A stretch of DNA of 64,000 nucleotides, taken from positions 251,162,001 to 251,226,000 of the forward strand of contig CM097885.1 of the NCBI GenBank assembly GCA_044892525.1. The letters run 5' to 3'. Both the position numbers and the translations under genes were made by a program. Below are positions 52,506 through 60,629 of this stretch, one piece after another. Below the pieces are notes generated by a model, which saw only the letters and a list, made by a program, of their open reading frames with translations, did no database searches and was not told where the DNA came from. The stretch is from Schmidtea polychroa. Taxonomy: Eukaryota. Every line of letters starts with the position of its first letter. The first letter of the stretch is position 1.

Positions 52506-53888
52506 CTACACAAATGTTTCTTCATAAACGACCCAAGGTCTCGCAATCTCGGATCGATTCGTAGAAGGTTTGGGTATTGTTCGAAATTCAATTAACACAA
52601 CGATACTGAGAATAATGAGAGAGATTGTTATAATGAGAGTAGTTATTAATAATGTTGCACACACAATTTCACTGTCCGTTTTTAATGACGATATGGTTTC
52701 GTTATTAGTCATTGACTCATTGATGCTAGAAAAGATGATTACGTTGGCAGAGCTAGGGGTTCGGTTGGACTGATTTGATTTGTTTCGATTTCCATACTGC
52801 GAGTTGATAGATGGAATTTGCACAATTTCATTTTCCACTAAAGTTAATTGCCATAAATTTGAAAATAGAGAACGTCTATAGTATTTTATTTTAATGAACA
52901 CTAATTTTGACGTCGATATTGGTGAACGTTGACGAAAAGTTATTGTTTGAGATTTATTTTTTTCATTTAATATAGATTGAATTTTTCCATAATAATATAA
53001 AATAGCTTTTTGATTGGGCTCCGCTTGTCGGGTAACATTCACTAATTGATTGAAAATATGAAAAGTAACCCGGTTTGTTTCATTAACTAATCGTATCATA
53101 TGTTGACTAGAGTGTATTCTGATCCATTGACTATCAATTTCAGTTCCGTTTTCATATAAAGATTTTTCATAATAATGAATCAGAATATTATAGTTATGAT
53201 GTAATTTTAAATTTGCATACTTTATAAAGGGTTTTCTGCTATTCAATGTATCTATCGCATAATTTTGAAAAACTGCTTTTACTTGTTGGGATTCCTGGGG
53301 TTCCCAATATATGTCAATTCCATTTACCAGTGGTTCAATTGATACTCGATTATGTAATCTCTTTGTCCAGATATTAATACGTATAAGATTTTGTATTTTT
53401 GTATTATTATTTTCTGAATTTAATTGTGTAATTAACCACGGGTATTCATAATTCATTGTTAATAATCTAGCCACATAAATACTTTTGTTGCTGTTTAACT
53501 TTATTGGGGGTTCAAAGTAATTTATTAGATTACTTATCTCAATTTCTTCTGATCCCTCAGCATAATAGACCCATACTATTTGAGTACATGTTGAGTATAT
53601 ATGAATTTTATCTAGTAGGGTAACTGTGTTAGTTGCATACAATGGGAATACTCTCCCAGCATTCACTGATATTATATTGATAATCATTACTGTTGTAATT
53701 AGTAAAACTTTATTGATGTAACTCAATGAAGCAGGGTTTTTTGTAAACTTTTGTTTAATTACTGGGTTCCCTGCATCTTTATTTGGTTTTGATCTCAATG
53801 GATAACGTGATTCATCTTCTATTATCTTCTTGCATCTATTTACATGAACGATGATTGTCCCAGCCTTTTTATTGTTTTGTGGACGCAA
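52506..53888 (-). CDS. Integrase C-tail fused to type I membrane glycoprotein (signal, FN3-like ectodomain, TM)
   Basis: Begins with IIVHVNRCKK (integrase GPY/F tail). Hydrophobic VLLITTVMIINIISVNAG; IDIYWEP..NLKLHHNYNILI FN3-like pattern; many N-x-S/T sequons; TM IVCATLLITTLIITISLIILSIVVLI. Confidence 0.7.
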   Translation of the reverse strand: MRPQNNKKAGTIIVHVNRCKKIIEDESRYPLRSKPNKDAGNPVIKQKFTKNPASLSYINKVLLITTVMIINIISVNAGRVFPLYATNTVTLLDKIHIYSTCTQIVWVYYAEGSEEIEISNLINYFEPPIKLNSNKSIYVARLLTMNYEYPWLITQLNSENNNTKIQNLIRINIWTKRLHNRVSIEPLVNGIDIYWEPQESQQVKAVFQNYAIDTLNSRKPFIKYANLKLHHNYNILIHYYEKSLYENGTEIDSQWIRIHSSQHMIRLVNETNRVTFHIFNQLVNVTRQAEPNQKAILYYYGKIQSILNEKNKSQTITFRQRSPISTSKLVFIKIKYYRRSLFSNLWQLTLVENEIVQIPSINSQYGNRNKSNQSNRTPSSANVIIFSSINESMTNNETISSLKTDSEIVCATLLITTLIITISLIILSIVVLIEFRTIPKPSTNRSEIARPWVVYEETFV

Positions 53889-53900
53889 TTTTAAGTTAGT

Positions 53901-55440
53901 CTATGTCGTATCACACACTAGATATGGTCCTTTAAACGGTCGTTGCAATTTCGTTGACAAGCTTTTTGTTGGTTCTGGTTTGTTTATATACACGAGATCT
54001 CCAATTTTAATGTCATGCGCCCTTGCGCGTTTATCATAGCATTCTTTATACGCTTCTTGATGATGCCTTATGTTAAGTCCAGCTTGGATCCATACTGACT
54101 GTAATCTTTCATGCATAGCTATTTTATAATCTGATACATCCATATATTTGGAAATAGGTGACTGAAATTCCAGATCGACTGGCATATTGTTTCGTCGTAG
54201 ATACATGAGATAAAAGGGTGTTTCTCCAGTGCTTTCATTTACTGCATTCCGGTATGCAAATAAGCATGGTTTAATGAATAAATCCCAATCCTTTTGTTTC
54301 CTATTTACATAGGATGATATCATATTAATTAGTGTCCCATTAAATCTTTCAACTAGGCCATCTGTTTGTGGATGATATGGTGAGGTACTAAGTTTCAATA
54401 TACCAAATAAATCTGCAATTGATTTAAATAATTCACTCTGAAAATTTGTTCCTTGATCTGTAAGTAATTTCTTTGGTGCTCCGTATCGAAAAATAATATT
54501 CTCCACAAATATTTTCGCAACTGTTTCTGCTTTCTGATTTGGCATTGCATAAGCTTCTGGCCATTTAGTAAGATAATCGCAAAAATCAATAATGTATTTG
54601 TTGCCATTTGTTGTTTCCGGCAATGGACCAACGATTTCCATTGGTGCCTTTGGCACTGGCATAGGCTTAAGCGGAACTTTTATTTTCCGTCCCGTATTTC
54701 GTCTTGTTAGGCATATCTCACACGTATGACACCATTGTCTGACATCTTGTTCCATCGTTTTCCAATAATATTTCTGTTTCAATCTTGATAATGTTTTTCG
54801 CGCTGATAAATGCCCTCCTAATGCTCCATCGTGATACAACAACAGTAATGCTTTTCGATGTTTTGTCGGAACAATAATTAACAAATTTTCATTTTGTACA
54901 CATTTTAACAAACCATCATGAATAATGTATTTATGGTTCTCTTCGGCAATATGTTTCCAGTCACTCTCCTTTTTGATTGAGACAGCATGTTGACGTAATT
55001 GATTTAATTCCTCGTCATTTTCCTGATCATCTTGTAATTTTTCTATATTATTTGCCGTTTTAATTGCCATGAATATTGTATTTTCGCAATTTTTCTCATC
55101 CAGCTCAACATTATTTTCTACGGGTATTCTCGACATAGCATCCGCATTTGCATTTGACTTTCCTGTACGATACTTTATCTCGAAATCATATTCTTGTAAC
55201 GCAATTGACCACCTAATTAATTTACTGGCTGAATCTCTGTGCTTCATTAGCCATTGTAACGGATTGTGATCCGTAAAGACAACAAACTTTCTGCCTACTA
55301 GGTATTGTCGAAAAGTGGTTATCCCATATACCAATGCTAACGTTTCTTTTTCGATTGTCGAATAATTTTTTTCATGAGGTTTCAATGATCTGCTGGCATA
55401 AGCAATTACATGATCTTTTTCCCCTTCTACTTGCTGTCCT
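53901..55440 (-). pseudogene. RNase H + integrase
   Basis: AYASRSL..YSTIEKE.LA..TDHNPL; H..ALGGH..C..C zinc finger; DYLTKWPEA, LLTDQG, YHPQTDGLVERFN; GPY motif. Confidence 0.96.
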
Positions 55441-55450
55441 AATACCGCGC

Positions 55451-56677
55451 CTAATGTGAAATTACTGTCATTAATATAAACGGTTTTTTAAAGTTCGGAC
55501 ATCTTAATATCGGCTGTTTTATTAAGCTTTCTTTGAGTTCATCAAACGCTTCTTGCTGAGCTGTTGTCCATTTAAATTTTGCTTGCTTTTTCAATAACAT
55601 GTTCAAAGGTTGTGCGACATGTGAGAAACGTTTAATAAACTTTCTGTAATAACTAGCTAATCCCAGAAATTGTCGAACCTGATCTACATCCTTGGGAATA
55701 GGATATTTCTTAATTTTCTCTACATTTTCTGGATTTGGTTGCAAACCTCGACGCGAAATGATATGACCCACATAAACGACTTCAGATTTTCCCCATTCTC
55801 ATTTGGAGGGTTTTATTTTTAAGTTTGCTTCTAACAATCGCTTGAATACTGTTTCCACATCCTGCAAATGTTCCTGAAAACTATTCGAAAATATTATAAT
55901 ATCGTCAATATACACTAATGCATGTGGTATATCGCGCAAAACAAAATTCATACCTCTCTGAAATGTAGCAGGTGCTCCTGTTACTCCGAATGGTAACACG
56001 TTAAACTCATATAGACCTTTCCCATCTGAAAATGCAGTTTTCCTTCTATCTTCCTCTTTGACTTTAAATTGATTGTATCCTTTATTAAGATCTATTACCG
56101 TAAAATATTGCACCTCCCCCATCTGATCGAACATTTCCTGTGGAACAGGAATAGAATATGTATCTTTTCTCGTAACTTGGTTCAATTTTCGATAGTCGAC
56201 ACAAAATCTTAAATCACCGTCCTTCTTTTTAACTACTACTATTGATGATGAGAATGGTGAGGAACTATCTCTTATTATATTGAATTCTTTCATTGCTTTG
56301 ATTTGCCGATCACTTTCTTCCTGATGTATGTATGGTATTCTATACGGCCGTAATTTTATTGGGGTTTCGCTGAGTAATGGTATTTCATGCTCAATCACCT
56401 GAGTGAGTCCCAGATCATACTCATGTTTTGCAAATACATTTCTATATTTCTTTAATAATGCACCAAATTCTTGTTTTTGCAAATCCGTCAAATCTTTGCT
56501 TGTGATCTGAGGTTCTTTATAAATTTTTATATTTCTCGGTAACTTCTGAGCTTCCTCTGATTTGATTTTTGTTAATTTTCCCAATTTGGTTTTGGGCTTT
56601 ATTTCAACGGATCTTGCACTATAATTCGCTATTCTAACTGGTACTGACTTGTTTTGGACTTTCACTACTTCGCACAC
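55451..56677 (-). pseudogene. Reverse transcriptase (+connection)
   Basis: RFCVDYRKLN, IDLNKGYNQF, LPFG, VYIDDIII. In-frame TGA at 55799-55801 (PSK*EW); frameshift at ~55465 through the TDAS motif. Confidence 0.96.
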
Positions 56678-59461: not shown

Positions 59462-59557
59462 AGTTTTTCTTAGTTCTGGCTTAACTCTTTCATTTACTCG
59501 TCTTTGGGGTGGACTCATTTCTTGCTTCTCATTTTTCTTTTCTGTTAGAGATGAACA

Positions 59558-59870
59558 CAGTGTTTTCCAACCACCTTTTTCGTTTACCCAGCTCATTAAA
59601 TATTCGTTTACTAGCCGGGCAGCGATGTCTATCAAATTTTCTAACTTGTCTGACCTTGCGAACGTATGCGTTCCAATTTCTAAAACAACATAAGTTAAAG
59701 CTATTATTATAACTTCCTTATTAATTTCATTTTTTGTTAACTTTTCAATTACTGATCTCTCGCAAAATGTATTCTCTTCGCCAAATTTCTGCATCACTTC
59801 AGGAAGCCTATTCTTCATCTCTTTAACTATTTCTTTCAGTTCATCATCTACCTCTATTTCTATGTCGAAC
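59558..59870 (-). CDS. Bcl-2-like domain within the large ORF
   Basis: BH1-like VIEKLTKNEINKEVIIIALTY and BH2-like LVNEYLMSWVNEKGGWKTL, with canonical spacing. Confidence 0.65.
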
Positions 59871-60178
59871 ATTGGATATACTGCTTTAACGAGATGTTTC
59901 AACATTTTCTTAGTTTCGTCGACGTCTTGTTCTAGCTTCACTAAATATTTCTTTATTTCATATAAAGTTCTAACTTTCTTATTTTTGATTTCACCATTTA
60001 TTTCGCCTTCAGGTACAAGTGGCTCTCCTTGTACGTCTGGTTCTGTGGACTGATCTTTGTTATCAGGATCTTTTTGCTCATTATCACTAACGATTTCATC
60101 AATTTCTTTATTTCCCTTAACTTTTTCATCTTGTTCCTCTGTGTCAGGCTTGTTAGACTCAATATTTACTTCTAAACT

Positions 60179-60460
60179 CACTCCTTTTACTACGACTATA
60201 TGGTTCACTAAATATCCCACTCGTCCATCTCCGATCAAATATCCATTTTCATCCAGCTCTTGTGGTACACACCCACAATCATATAAGTATTCATCATCGT
60301 CAAGTTCTTCACCTTTGTACATTATTATAATAATTCCATCTTTTCCCAGCGTTTCAGCCGCTCTCTTCCGCAATTTTCGGACCTTTGCACACCAATGCTC
60401 GTCTACATATTCCGTTTTGCCATATCCCTCATAATCCAATGCTATCAAAAATGGCTTTAA
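60179..60460 (-). CDS. Ubiquitin-like domain within the large ORF
   Basis: VRKLRKRAAETLG..IIMYKGEELDDDEYLYDCG..HIVVVKG vs ubiquitin IENVKAKIQDKEG..LIFAGKQLEDGRTLSDYN..HLVLRLRGG. Confidence 0.55.
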
Positions 60461-60629
60461 CTCTACTCTTGCCTTTCGGAGCTCCGTGCCCAATCTTTGC
60501 AATAAACTTCTTAATAACTTGGCATATCTGGTTTTCACATGTAAATATGGTCGTAAGTAGTAGGATGTGTCACCACTGGCACATGTCACCTCTGGCACAC
60601 CCCCCCGGGGGGTAAACGAAATTTTTTTT

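What the first reader, a model, noticed from the sequence alone, without database searches (positions are those of the whole stretch)
52506..60555. Giant Gypsy-type retroelement: Ubl / Bcl-2 / class III fusogen / Pol / second glycoprotein in one collinear unit
Seen: ~8.05 kb (~2,680 codons) of continuous minus-strand coding. Repairing six small lesions (frameshifts ~57555, ~56670, ~55465; stops 57475, 55799, 53901) gives Ubl - Bcl-2-like - signal - chuvirus-type G - TM - PR - RT - RH - INT - signal - FN3-like ectodomain - TM. Known: PR-RT-RH-INT order defines Ty3/Gypsy, and env genes normally follow pol as a separate ORF. Inferred: an enveloped, potentially infectious retroelement in which Pol sits cytosolically between two membrane glycoproteins and is released by signal peptidase and the retroviral protease, plus host-manipulation cargo. 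The G-pol junction is the weakest link, because pol has its own ATG at 57399 and could be a separate ORF. I know of no described element with this combination.
Basis: partly seen in the sequence, partly recalled or inferred. Interest (0 to 1): 0.93.

Follow-up and report, generated by a model that had tools for sequence, protein, structure and literature searches.

The report
Decayed enveloped Gypsy retroelement with cargo
This is a dead copy, missing its front end, of a virus-like jumping gene whose intact relatives make their coat, a cell-death-regulator-like part, a membrane-fusion protein and their copying enzymes as one giant protein; the layout is a rare variant of a recently described kind.

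Summary
Window 52506-60598 (minus strand) is about 8.1 kb of collinear coding sequence with six breaks: three frame changes and three in-frame stops.

The module order is:
- Ubl-like domain
- Bcl-2-like domain
- signal segment
- Monjiviricetes/chuvirus-type G (Pfam E=1e-84) with its TM
- PR-RT-RH-INT of Ty3/gypsy type (nearest solved RT is Ty3, E=2e-43)
- a terminal module made of a signal-anchor, a sequon-rich ectodomain and a TM

The modules belong together. Eleven relatives from metagenome contigs carry G and PR/Pol in one uninterrupted ORF of 1,251-4,844 aa. Some also carry Gag, the Ubl-like and the Bcl-2-like parts upstream of G. The retroelement-linked G proteins form an exclusive group among 108 G proteins.

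This copy is a fossil. It has no gag, no LTR pair and no start codon for its first domain. "Potentially infectious" is therefore not supported, and "FN3-like" is untested.

Parts of the layout are already published: ENV-before-POL Ty3/gypsy elements (Chary & Hayashi 2026; Sacco 2022), chuvirus-G capture, and a single Gag-Pol-Env polyprotein (Atlas virus). I did not find the Ubl/Bcl-2-like cargo or the second membrane module described in the papers I could search.

Verdict: new variant of a known kind, moderately interesting at family level.

The parts
52506..60598 (-). Remnant of one giant polyprotein gene (Ubl-like, Bcl-2-like, G, PR-RT-RH-INT, terminal membrane module). It is broken six times (3 frame changes, 3 in-frame stops) and truncated at the 5' end: no gag, no start codon for the first domain.
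   Evidence: relatives with the same order in one ORF
60251..60556 (-). Ubiquitin-like (beta-grasp) domain
   Evidence: Shared with P0003, P0017, P0011, P0007. Family profile hits UHRF1 and ubiquilin Ubl domains, E 0.005-0.01. Foldseek gives ISG15 at rmsd 1.6-1.9 A over 67-70 residues and viral Ubl proteins.
59519..59965 (-). Bcl-2-like helical bundle ending in a conserved W..GGW (BH2-like) motif
   Evidence: Pfam Bcl-2 E=0.0015, below the cut-off, and hit in 4 of 7 family members. The only PDB sequence hits are Bcl-2 proteins. Profile hits are Bcl-xL. Foldseek top hits are all Bcl-2 family, TM 0.46-0.60. Motif conserved in 5 rows.
59408..59464 (-). Hydrophobic segment. It aligns with the N-terminal signal peptide of stand-alone G proteins, and it sits where a Bcl-2 tail anchor would be.
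   Evidence: (stand-alone G residues 2-20 align here)
57575..59407 (-). Monjiviricetes/chuvirus-type fusion glycoprotein G: ectodomain, TM (57701-57757) and tail. It has no internal break and keeps all 12 invariant cysteines of the family.
   Evidence: Pfam PF24664, 285 bits; 1375 homologues; alignment A2; hydrophobic segment; weak hits to herpesvirus gB only
53775..57574 (-). pol, a broken gene: 2 frame changes and 1 stop inside it, plus a shift and a stop at its junction with G and a stop at its junction with the terminal module
56887..57177 (-). Retroviral-type aspartic protease domain
   Evidence: Pfam RVP E=4e-7
55742..56233 (-). Reverse transcriptase domain (YIDD motif present)
   Evidence: Pfam RVT_1 E=1.5e-29; Ty3 RT 4ol8 E=2e-43
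55188..55570 (-). RNase H domain
   Evidence: Pfam RT_RNaseH and RT_RNaseH_2
54327..54872 (-). Integrase zinc-binding and core domains
   Evidence: Pfam Integrase_H2C2 E=5e-20, rve E=2e-9
52506..53726 (-). Terminal membrane module: hydrophobic signal-anchor (53670-53726), ectodomain of 341 aa with 11 N-glycosylation sequons (52647-53669), TM (52590-52646), 27-aa tail and terminal stop
   Evidence: The stretch just upstream continues the Pol C-terminus of P0004 and P0152. No homologue found.
60627..60999 (-). Non-coding array of short motifs directly upstream (7x TGACCTTGA, 7x ATGACTCAT). Whether it belongs to the element is not shown.
52303..52318 (-). All-purine run of 16 nt about 190 bp after the terminal stop. 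It is a candidate polypurine tract and is unverified.

Best explanation
The locus is a decayed, 5'-truncated genomic copy of a lineage of env-carrying Ty3/gypsy (Metaviridae-like) retroelements.

In intact members one giant ORF encodes, in order: Gag (capsid/zinc knuckle); in some members an Ubl-like and a Bcl-2-like module; a complete G taken from a Monjiviricetes/chuvirus-like RNA virus, with its signal peptide and TM; one or more retropepsins; RT, RNase H and integrase; and a terminal extension that usually carries two hydrophobic segments about 280-360 residues apart.

Shown: the domain order, the continuity of the ORF in relatives, the exclusive grouping of the retroelement-linked G proteins, and the decay of this copy.

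Inferred: the product is a multi-pass membrane polyprotein.
- The Gag, Ubl-like and Bcl-2-like parts stay in the cytosol.
- The internal signal segment takes the G ectodomain into the ER lumen. After signal-peptidase cleavage it would leave the Bcl-2-like part tail-anchored.
- The G TM returns the chain to the cytosol for PR-RT-RH-INT.
- The next hydrophobic segment takes the sequon-rich terminal ectodomain into the lumen, and the last TM anchors it.
- The retropepsin cuts the cytosolic junctions.

The Bcl-2-like part would delay host cell death. G would mediate fusion. The fast-evolving terminal glycoprotein may be a second surface or receptor-binding protein.

The window copy itself can do none of this.
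For: Domain order on one strand.

Eleven relatives have G followed by PR/Pol in a single uninterrupted ORF: P0002-5, 7, 8, 10, 12, 16, 19 and P0152, 1,251-4,844 aa. They come from ENA metagenome contigs and one NCBI MAG record; the sources suggest, though I did not check, that prokaryote-style gene calling without introns produced them.

Every junction is seen in at least one continuous ORF:
- Gag to Ubl: P0003, P0017
- Ubl to Bcl-2-like: P0017, P0011
- Bcl-2-like to G: P0002, P0006, P0011, P0017
- G to PR: 11 proteins
- INT to terminal extension: P0004, P0007, P0016, P0152

The window's pol pieces are 48-57% identical to these relatives, against 37.5% to the ordinary gag-pol Gypsy in the same window.

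In a neighbour-joining tree of 108 G regions, the window G and 13 retroelement-associated G proteins form an exclusive split. Identity is 25-43% inside the split and 18-24% to the 94 stand-alone G proteins of about 660 aa.

Ubl-like and Bcl-2-like support.

Terminal module: two hydrophobic segments, 11 of 12 sequons between them, and the reading frame of the Pol C-terminus. Three of four relatives with long extensions show the same two-segment pattern.

Decay: six breaks, no gag, no LTR pair.
Against: - No second copy from the same genome was examined, and the host is unidentified.
- The relatives' DNA was not inspected, so their LTRs, integration state and assembly quality are unknown.
- The Bcl-2 match is below Pfam's cut-off (19.5 against 31.4 bits) and rests on a low-confidence model (pLDDT 47).
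- The terminal modules of the window copy and of the relatives share no detectable sequence similarity, and the only model is unusable (pLDDT 33).
- Topology and cleavage are inference only.
- The NJ tree has no support values.
Confidence: 0.85

Rival explanations
1. Chance neighbours: a non-retroviral endogenous chuvirus G fragment happens to lie next to a truncated ordinary Gypsy pol, and the two never formed one element.
For: This copy has a frame change and a stop between G and PR. It has no LTRs to delimit a unit. Stand-alone G-derived insertions are common in arthropod genomes (PMC7642597, PMC10084718).
Against: Eleven relatives have G and PR/Pol in one uninterrupted ORF. The window aligns collinearly to them from G to the end of INT without large gaps. 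The G groups exclusively with retroelement-linked G proteins.
Confidence: 0.03
2. Host co-option: the G-containing open stretch, or G alone starting from the methionine just before its signal segment, is kept by selection as a host gene while the rest decays.
For: The 1019-codon stretch has no internal break, while all six breaks lie in the remaining 62% of the unit. Under uniform decay the chance is about 0.62^6 = 0.06. All 12 invariant cysteines of G are kept. An ATG directly precedes the signal segment.
Against: P of about 0.06 is not significant. There is no start codon for the Ubl-like or Bcl-2-like part. No orthologue or expression data exist. A TE-rich, satellite-rich neighbourhood is not a typical setting for a conserved gene.
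Confidence: 0.08
3. One reading: a complete, potentially infectious enveloped retroelement without gag, whose only defects are six small lesions.
For: Collinear modules and few breaks. G is complete.
Against: Relatives carry a shared Gag-like region upstream of the Ubl/G part. That region is absent here: best E=0.45 in the 3.4 kb upstream, where other ORFs lie instead. There is no LTR pair in the window. The first methionine lies inside the Ubl-like domain.
Confidence: 0.02
4. The helical module is not a Bcl-2 homologue but a generic helical spacer. The Bcl-2 hits would then come from helical composition plus one short motif.
For: Every single test is below its formal significance cut-off: Pfam 19.5 bits against a 31.4 cut-off; PDB E about 1 and 0.1-1.4; Foldseek E about 4e-3 on a model of pLDDT 47. 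P0003 aligns poorly in this stretch.
Against: Independent methods return Bcl-2 proteins and almost nothing else. Four family members each hit Pfam Bcl-2 on their own. The whole length of the Bcl-2 targets is covered at TM 0.46-0.60. The W..GGW motif aligns to the same motif of solved Bcl-2 proteins and is conserved across relatives that share only 22-27% identity in this module. A hydrophobic segment follows at tail-anchor distance.
Confidence: 0.27

Closest known systems
Ty3/gypsy 'ancient errantiviruses' with GAG-ENV-POL order in Nematoda, Bryozoa and Platyhelminthes (Chary & Hayashi, eLife 2026, PMC13524379; Sacco et al. 2022, J Gen Virol 103:1739, not held in the library and cited through the former)
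   Same: Ty3/gypsy Pol. A class III (gB-type) env taken from a virus and placed between gag and pol. Found in non-insect invertebrates and usually multicopy.
   Different: The paper's main text, searched by keyword, has no occurrence of fused, in-frame, single ORF, polyprotein, ubiquitin or Bcl-2, and it does not describe a second membrane protein after pol. Whether this lineage falls in one of their POL clades was not tested. This copy lacks gag.
Anakin and other BEL/Pao or gypsy elements carrying a Chuviridae-like glycoprotein in mosquitoes and other arthropods (Dezordi et al. 2020, PMC7642597; PMC13524379 methods)
   Same: Capture of a chuvirus-type G by an LTR retroelement.
   Different: In the general picture given by the sources read here, env lies downstream of pol as a separate ORF. 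Anakin is BEL/Pao, not Ty3/gypsy. No Ubl or Bcl-2-like cargo is reported.
Atlas virus of the hookworm Ancylostoma ceylanicum (Belpaoviridae; Merchant et al. 2022, PMC9094657)
   Same: One intron-less ORF encodes a whole polyprotein of 2,828 residues that includes membrane glycoproteins, so Gag, Pol and Env are made in equal amounts from one chain.
   Different: It is BEL/Pao, not Ty3/gypsy. The order is Gag-Pol-Env. The env is a phlebovirus-type class II Gn-Gc. No Ubl or Bcl-2-like part is reported.
Viral Bcl-2 homologues of large DNA viruses (herpes-, pox- and iridoviruses)
   Same: A virus-encoded helical Bcl-2-like module followed by a membrane anchor. These proteins appear among the Foldseek BFVD hits.
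   Different: They are separate genes of DNA viruses. Here the module is a segment of a retroelement polyprotein, and its anchor would be the signal peptide of the next protein. No sequence reaches family significance.
Multi-pass polyproteins of flavi- and pestiviruses, processed by signal peptidase and a viral protease (established knowledge; a BVDV polyprotein fragment appears)
   Same: Cytosolic and luminal segments alternate in one chain. An internal signal sequence follows a cytosolic structural protein. A ubiquitin-like insert sits within a polyprotein.
   Different: They are unrelated RNA viruses with no reverse transcription. The likeness is one of mechanism only, and it is inferred.

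Membership tests
Ty3/gypsy (Metaviridae) LTR retroelement | Pol domain order PR-RT-RH-INT | tested here: met
   Pfam hits in this order on one strand
Ty3/gypsy (Metaviridae) LTR retroelement | RT closest to Ty3/gypsy RT | tested here: met
   Best solved structures are Ty3 RT 4ol8 (E=2e-43) and Ty3 Gag-Pol 7q5b (1.5e-42), ahead of caulimovirus, foamy virus and HIV RT. 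No BEL/Pao-specific Pfam family was hit. No full RT phylogeny was made.
Ty3/gypsy (Metaviridae) LTR retroelement | Long terminal repeats flanking the coding part | tested here: not met
   No direct repeat pair around the unit in the window. The 5' side may lie beyond the truncation.
Ty3/gypsy (Metaviridae) LTR retroelement | Gag (capsid/nucleocapsid) upstream | tested here: not met
   Absent in this copy. Present in relatives: zf-CCHC in P0003 and P0017, Retrotrans_gag in P0012, and a shared N-terminal region.
Ty3/gypsy (Metaviridae) LTR retroelement | Primer binding site and polypurine tract | tested here: inconclusive
   Only a 16-nt purine run after the terminal stop. No tRNA gene in the window to compare with. 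The 5' end is missing.
GAG-ENV-POL env-carrying Ty3/gypsy elements (PMC13524379) | Class III-type env between gag and pol, same strand, within 2 kb of pol | tested here: met
   G lies directly upstream of PR. Gag is missing in this copy but present upstream of G in relatives.
GAG-ENV-POL env-carrying Ty3/gypsy elements (PMC13524379) | POL falls in one of the published host-associated clades | not tested
   No reference sequences of those elements were at hand, and fetching them was left out.
Monjiviricetes/Jingchuvirales fusion glycoprotein (PF24664) | Score above Pfam's gathering cut-off | tested here: met
   285 bits against a cut-off of 27
Monjiviricetes/Jingchuvirales fusion glycoprotein (PF24664) | Signal peptide, conserved cysteines, C-terminal TM | tested here: met
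   Hydrophobic segments at both ends. 12 invariant cysteines shared with 29 homologues. Stand-alone G N-termini align to the internal signal segment.
Class III viral fusion proteins | gB / rhabdovirus-G type fold | tested here: inconclusive
   All 32 PDB hits of the G profile are herpesvirus gB, but at E=0.06-2.5. No structure of G was predicted. PMC13524379 states that the chuvirus-like glycoprotein is structurally similar to gB.
Bcl-2 family (PF00452) | Score above Pfam's gathering cut-off | tested here: not met
   19.5 bits against 31.4, E=0.0015. Four of 7 family members hit it, best E=9.6e-4, and none reaches the cut-off.
Bcl-2 family (PF00452) | Bcl-2 helical-bundle fold | tested here: inconclusive
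   Foldseek top hits are all Bcl-2 family (TM 0.46-0.60 by target, E about 4e-3), but the model has pLDDT 47.
Bcl-2 family (PF00452) | BH2-type tryptophan / double-glycine motif near the end of the bundle, then a membrane anchor | tested here: met
   The motif aligns to that of solved Bcl-2 proteins and is conserved in 5 rows. A hydrophobic segment follows about 35 residues later.
Bcl-2 family (PF00452) | BH1/BH3 motifs and a ligand-binding groove | not tested
   The model is too poor for this.
Ubiquitin-like (beta-grasp) domains | Sequence or fold match to ubiquitin-like domains | tested here: inconclusive
   Family profile against PDB: UHRF1 and ubiquilin Ubl domains, E=0.005-0.01. Foldseek: ISG15, rmsd 1.6-1.9 A over 67-70 residues. 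Pfam ubiquitin is hit in only one relative, at 0.031.
Ubiquitin-like (beta-grasp) domains | Di-glycine tail for conjugation or cleavage | tested here: not met
   No di-glycine at the end of the domain in the translated sequence.
   No Pfam hit even at E<=10, no PDB hit, and the AlphaFold model is unusable (pLDDT 33).

The most novel reading that the evidence does not exclude
A lineage of enveloped Ty3/gypsy retroelements makes everything as one multi-pass polyprotein. Like large DNA viruses, it carries host-manipulation cargo: a ubiquitin-like domain and a Bcl-2-like death regulator that becomes tail-anchored by the signal peptide of the fusogen that follows it. It also carries a second, rapidly evolving surface glycoprotein after integrase. 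In some members there are ankyrin repeats and several protease copies. This would be the first retroelement-encoded Bcl-2 homologue and a two-glycoprotein retroelement envelope.
Probability: 0.35. Interest if true: 0.85.

Novelty: new variant of a known kind. Interest (0 to 1): 0.6.

Why it matters
Env-carrying Ty3/gypsy elements have only recently been recognised as old and widespread in animals. The ENV-before-POL order is known from a few phyla.

This locus and its relatives add three things at family level:
- The fusogen sits inside a single giant ORF, so Gag, Env and Pol come from one chain that must cross the membrane several times.
- Some members carry Ubl-like and Bcl-2-like modules. 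I found no report of such modules in retroelements in the papers I could search.
- A second membrane-protein-like module follows integrase.

If confirmed, this shows that retroelements can accumulate cargo the way large DNA viruses do. It would also give a natural series of sequences for studying how captured fusogens and cell-death regulators are built into polyproteins. The window copy itself is an inert fossil and matters only as a pointer to the family.

Tried and rejected
- LTR search by direct repeats and self-BLAST found nothing around the unit.
- Gag search upstream found nothing: zinc-knuckle pattern scan and tblastn with the Gag-like N-termini of nine relatives (best E=0.45). The ORFs upstream are unrelated.
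- The word-indexed protein search with the 1019-aa stretch gave one hit only. The exhaustive HMMER search was needed.
- Terminal module: no homologue, no PDB or Pfam hit, and no similarity to the relatives' terminal extensions. The single-sequence AlphaFold model was unusable, so I ran no further search on it.
- Host identification failed. Exact look-ups of two window ORFs are not on record. The neighbouring exonuclease ORF has only 37%-identical unnamed homologues. No tRNA or Rfam family was found.
- The exonuclease ORF downstream was considered as further cargo and rejected. It has no counterpart in any relative and has its own ATG.
- Sacco et al. 2022 could not be read.

Full report
**What is there**

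The window is AT-rich (25-40% GC), repeat-rich, animal-like DNA. It holds:
- a second, ordinary Gypsy element
- hAT and Tc1-like transposase remnants
- an 11-kb satellite with a 132-bp unit
- five N runs, which I left untouched

On the minus strand, 52506-60598 is coding in six successive open stretches. I searched each stretch separately. In order they give:

| Pfam family | E-value |
|---|---|
| Monjiviricetes_fusion | 1.1e-84 |
| RVP | 4e-7 |
| RVT_1 | 1.5e-29 |
| RT_RNaseH | 5e-22 |
| Integrase_H2C2 | 5e-20 |
| rve | 2e-9 |

The last stretch has no family hit.

A script that printed counts only found three frame changes and three in-frame stops, six breaks in all:
- G/pol junction: one shift and one stop
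- inside pol: two shifts and one stop
- pol/terminal-module junction: one stop

Aligned to intact relatives, the copy is collinear from the Ubl-like domain to the end of integrase, with no large insertion or deletion. The RT keeps its YIDD motif and the protease its DSG motif.

**Do the modules belong together?**

An exhaustive HMMER search with the 1019-aa first stretch found 1375 homologues. The best ones are very long proteins. Pfam gives them the same order as the window:
- an N-terminal part, with zf-CCHC in P0003 and P0017 and Retrotrans_gag in P0012
- Monjiviricetes_fusion
- one to five retropepsin copies
- RVT_1, RT_RNaseH, Integrase_H2C2, rve
- a long terminal extension

Eleven proteins (1,251-4,844 aa) have G and PR/Pol in one chain. 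They come from ENA metagenome contigs of 7.5-31 kb. One comes from an NCBI record binned as a Flavobacteriaceae MAG, which I take to be mis-binned. The sources suggest, though I did not check, that prokaryote-style gene calling made them; if so, each is one uninterrupted reading frame, not a spliced model.

The window's pol pieces are 48-57% identical to theirs. They are only 37.5% identical to the ordinary gag-pol Gypsy at about 600-3950 in the same window.

In a simple neighbour-joining tree of 108 G regions, the window G and 13 retroelement-associated G proteins form an exclusive split. Identity is 25-43% inside the split, against 18-24% to the 94 stand-alone G proteins of about 660 aa. The tree has no support values.

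Chance juxtaposition of an endogenous G fragment and a Gypsy pol is thus very unlikely.

**The part ahead of G**

- Residues 15-116 of the first stretch are shared with P0003, P0017, P0011 and P0007.
- Residues about 250-360 are shared with P0002, P0017, P0006 and P0011.

Evidence for the Bcl-2-like module:
- The window sequence alone hits only three PDB chains, all Bcl-2 proteins, at E about 1. The alignment runs over a W..GGW motif.
- A profile of the seven sequences hits only Ty3 RT, ubiquitin-like domains (UHRF1, ubiquilins; E=0.005-0.01) and Bcl-xL (E=0.1-1.4).
- Pfam Bcl-2 is hit, below its cut-off, by four of the seven members independently (best E=9.6e-4).
- The W..GGW motif is conserved in five rows.

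An AlphaFold model made with this shallow alignment is poor: mean pLDDT 47, and 50-75 within the two domains. Its Foldseek hits in the PDB are nevertheless almost all Bcl-2 family members, from human to Hydra, Trichoplax and sponge. They cover the whole target at TM 0.46-0.60. ISG15 also appears, at rmsd 1.6-1.9 A over 67-70 residues. In the viral library the hits are viral ubiquitin-like proteins and viral Bcl-2 homologues.

No single test is formally significant. Their agreement makes the Ubl-like fold likely (about 0.8) and the Bcl-2-like fold probable (about 0.7).

About 35 residues after the motif comes a hydrophobic segment that aligns with the N-terminal signal peptide of stand-alone G proteins. 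It therefore sits where a Bcl-2 tail anchor would be. That it serves both roles is my inference.

**G**

The G module is complete. It has a signal segment, an ectodomain with all 12 invariant cysteines of a 30-sequence alignment, a TM and a 53-residue tail. The family profile's only PDB hits are 32 herpesvirus gB entries at E=0.06-2.5. This is consistent with the class III assignment made in the literature (PMC13524379), but it is not a test of the fold.

**The terminal module**

The first 38 residues of the last stretch continue the Pol C-terminus of P0004 and P0152. The last stretch is therefore the in-frame continuation of pol.

It then has:
- a hydrophobic segment
- 341 residues with 11 of the stretch's 12 N-glycosylation sequons (N 10%, S+T 16%)
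- a strong TM
- a 27-residue tail

That is the layout of a type I membrane glycoprotein.

It has no detectable homologue and no sequence similarity to the relatives' extensions. Three of the four relatives with long extensions nevertheless show the same pair of hydrophobic segments, 280-350 residues apart, near the C-terminus.

The single-sequence model is unusable (pLDDT 33). 'FN3-like' is untested.

**What this copy lacks**

- The relatives share a Gag-like N-terminal region. Nothing like it lies in the 3.4 kb upstream (best E=0.45), and no zinc knuckle is there.
- The open stretch begins about 14 codons before the Ubl homology. Its first methionine lies inside that domain.
- Directly upstream is a non-coding array of short motifs. 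Beyond it are N runs, a RING-finger ORF on the other strand and an unrelated 369-aa ORF.
- No LTR pair exists in the window.
- About 190 bp after the terminal stop there is a 16-nt purine run, a candidate polypurine tract.
- About 425 bp after the stop, an ISG20/REXO-type exonuclease ORF begins. It has no counterpart in relatives and I take it for a neighbour.

The copy is therefore a 5'-truncated fossil, not a potentially infectious element.

**How the family most likely works (inferred)**

One chain is threaded through the ER membrane several times.
- Gag, the Ubl-like part and the Bcl-2-like part are cytosolic.
- The G ectodomain is luminal.
- PR-RT-RH-INT is cytosolic.
- The terminal ectodomain is luminal.

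Signal peptidase would cut after the signal segments, and the retropepsin would cut the cytosolic junctions. This resembles flavivirus-type polyproteins in mechanism only.

There are precedents for equimolar single-ORF expression. I read Atlas virus (a 2,828-residue Gag-Pol-Env ORF, PMC9094657). From my own knowledge I add single-ORF gag-pol elements such as Tf1.

**Comparison with what is known**

Chary & Hayashi (PMC13524379) report the following:
- Ty3/gypsy elements with gB-type env arranged GAG-ENV-POL in Nematoda, Bryozoa and Platyhelminthes.
- Earlier nematode elements with ENV and POL flipped, citing Sacco et al. 2022. That paper's title speaks of RNA-virus glycoprotein capture by a metavirus.
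- 114 arthropod gypsy elements with the chuvirus-like glycoprotein of Anakin (PMC7642597).

A keyword search of their main text finds no occurrence of fused, in-frame, single ORF, polyprotein, ubiquitin or Bcl-2. A library search for Bcl-2 together with LTR retrotransposons returned nothing relevant. I could not read Sacco et al. 2022, so part of this may already be described.

I file the locus as a new variant of a known kind.

- I did not fetch the DNA of the relatives' contigs or of any chuvirus.
- I built no consensus.
- I did not touch the N runs.

The report relies on tool alignments instead.
- The label 'polymerase-B-like' for the 369-aa ORF rests on that recollection only.
- My first notebook entry and my tool calls quote the bounds of open stretches as the ORF listing printed them. 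This was needed to search the pieces apart, but such bounds lie next to breaks. They are not repeated here.

Noticed in passing
window 60630-60924 (-): Seven copies of TGACCTTGA and seven of ATGACTCAT lie within about 300 bp directly upstream of the polyprotein's open stretch. The expectation for the whole window is 0.4 and 0.7. It looks like a promoter or enhancer array. There is no second copy in the window, so it is not shown to be an LTR.
   Followed up: partly
window 50281-52080 (-): ORF with an ISG20/REXO-type DEDDh exonuclease domain (PDB 7yw5, E=1e-11), interrupted by an N run. It starts about 425 bp after the element's terminal stop, on the same strand. No relative has a counterpart, so I take it for a neighbouring gene.
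   Followed up: partly
window 62887-63996 (-): A 369-aa ORF with no Pfam or PDB match. By eye it carries three polymerase-B-like palm motifs in the right order, so it may be a Maverick/Polinton-type polymerase remnant. This reading rests on memory only.
   Followed up: partly
window 61827-62321 (+): ORF ending in a C3HC4 RING finger (Pfam zf-C3HC4_3, E=3e-7), on the opposite strand between the element and the 369-aa ORF.
   Followed up: no
window 29714-29913 and 47113-47312: Two 200-base stretches are 100% identical, and each ends exactly at the start of an N run. The two masked or gapped stretches therefore probably lie in copies of one repeat. The N runs were not looked into.
   Followed up: no
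window 30156-41061: Satellite array of a 132-bp unit, about 83 copies, with strong GC skew (-0.64). Two more units lie at 26389-26672.
   Followed up: no
window ~600-3950 (-): An ordinary Gypsy element with gag (two CCHC knuckles), PR, RT and RH and no glycoprotein, cut by the window's start. Its RT is only 37.5% identical to the RT of the finding.
   Followed up: partly
relative P0152 (4844 aa) and P0059 (797 aa): P0152 carries ankyrin repeats, a C2H2 finger and four to five protease-like copies between G and RT, so cargo varies within the family. P0059 joins a G from outside the family's G group to an RNase H piece, which hints at a separate G-retroelement association.
   Followed up: no
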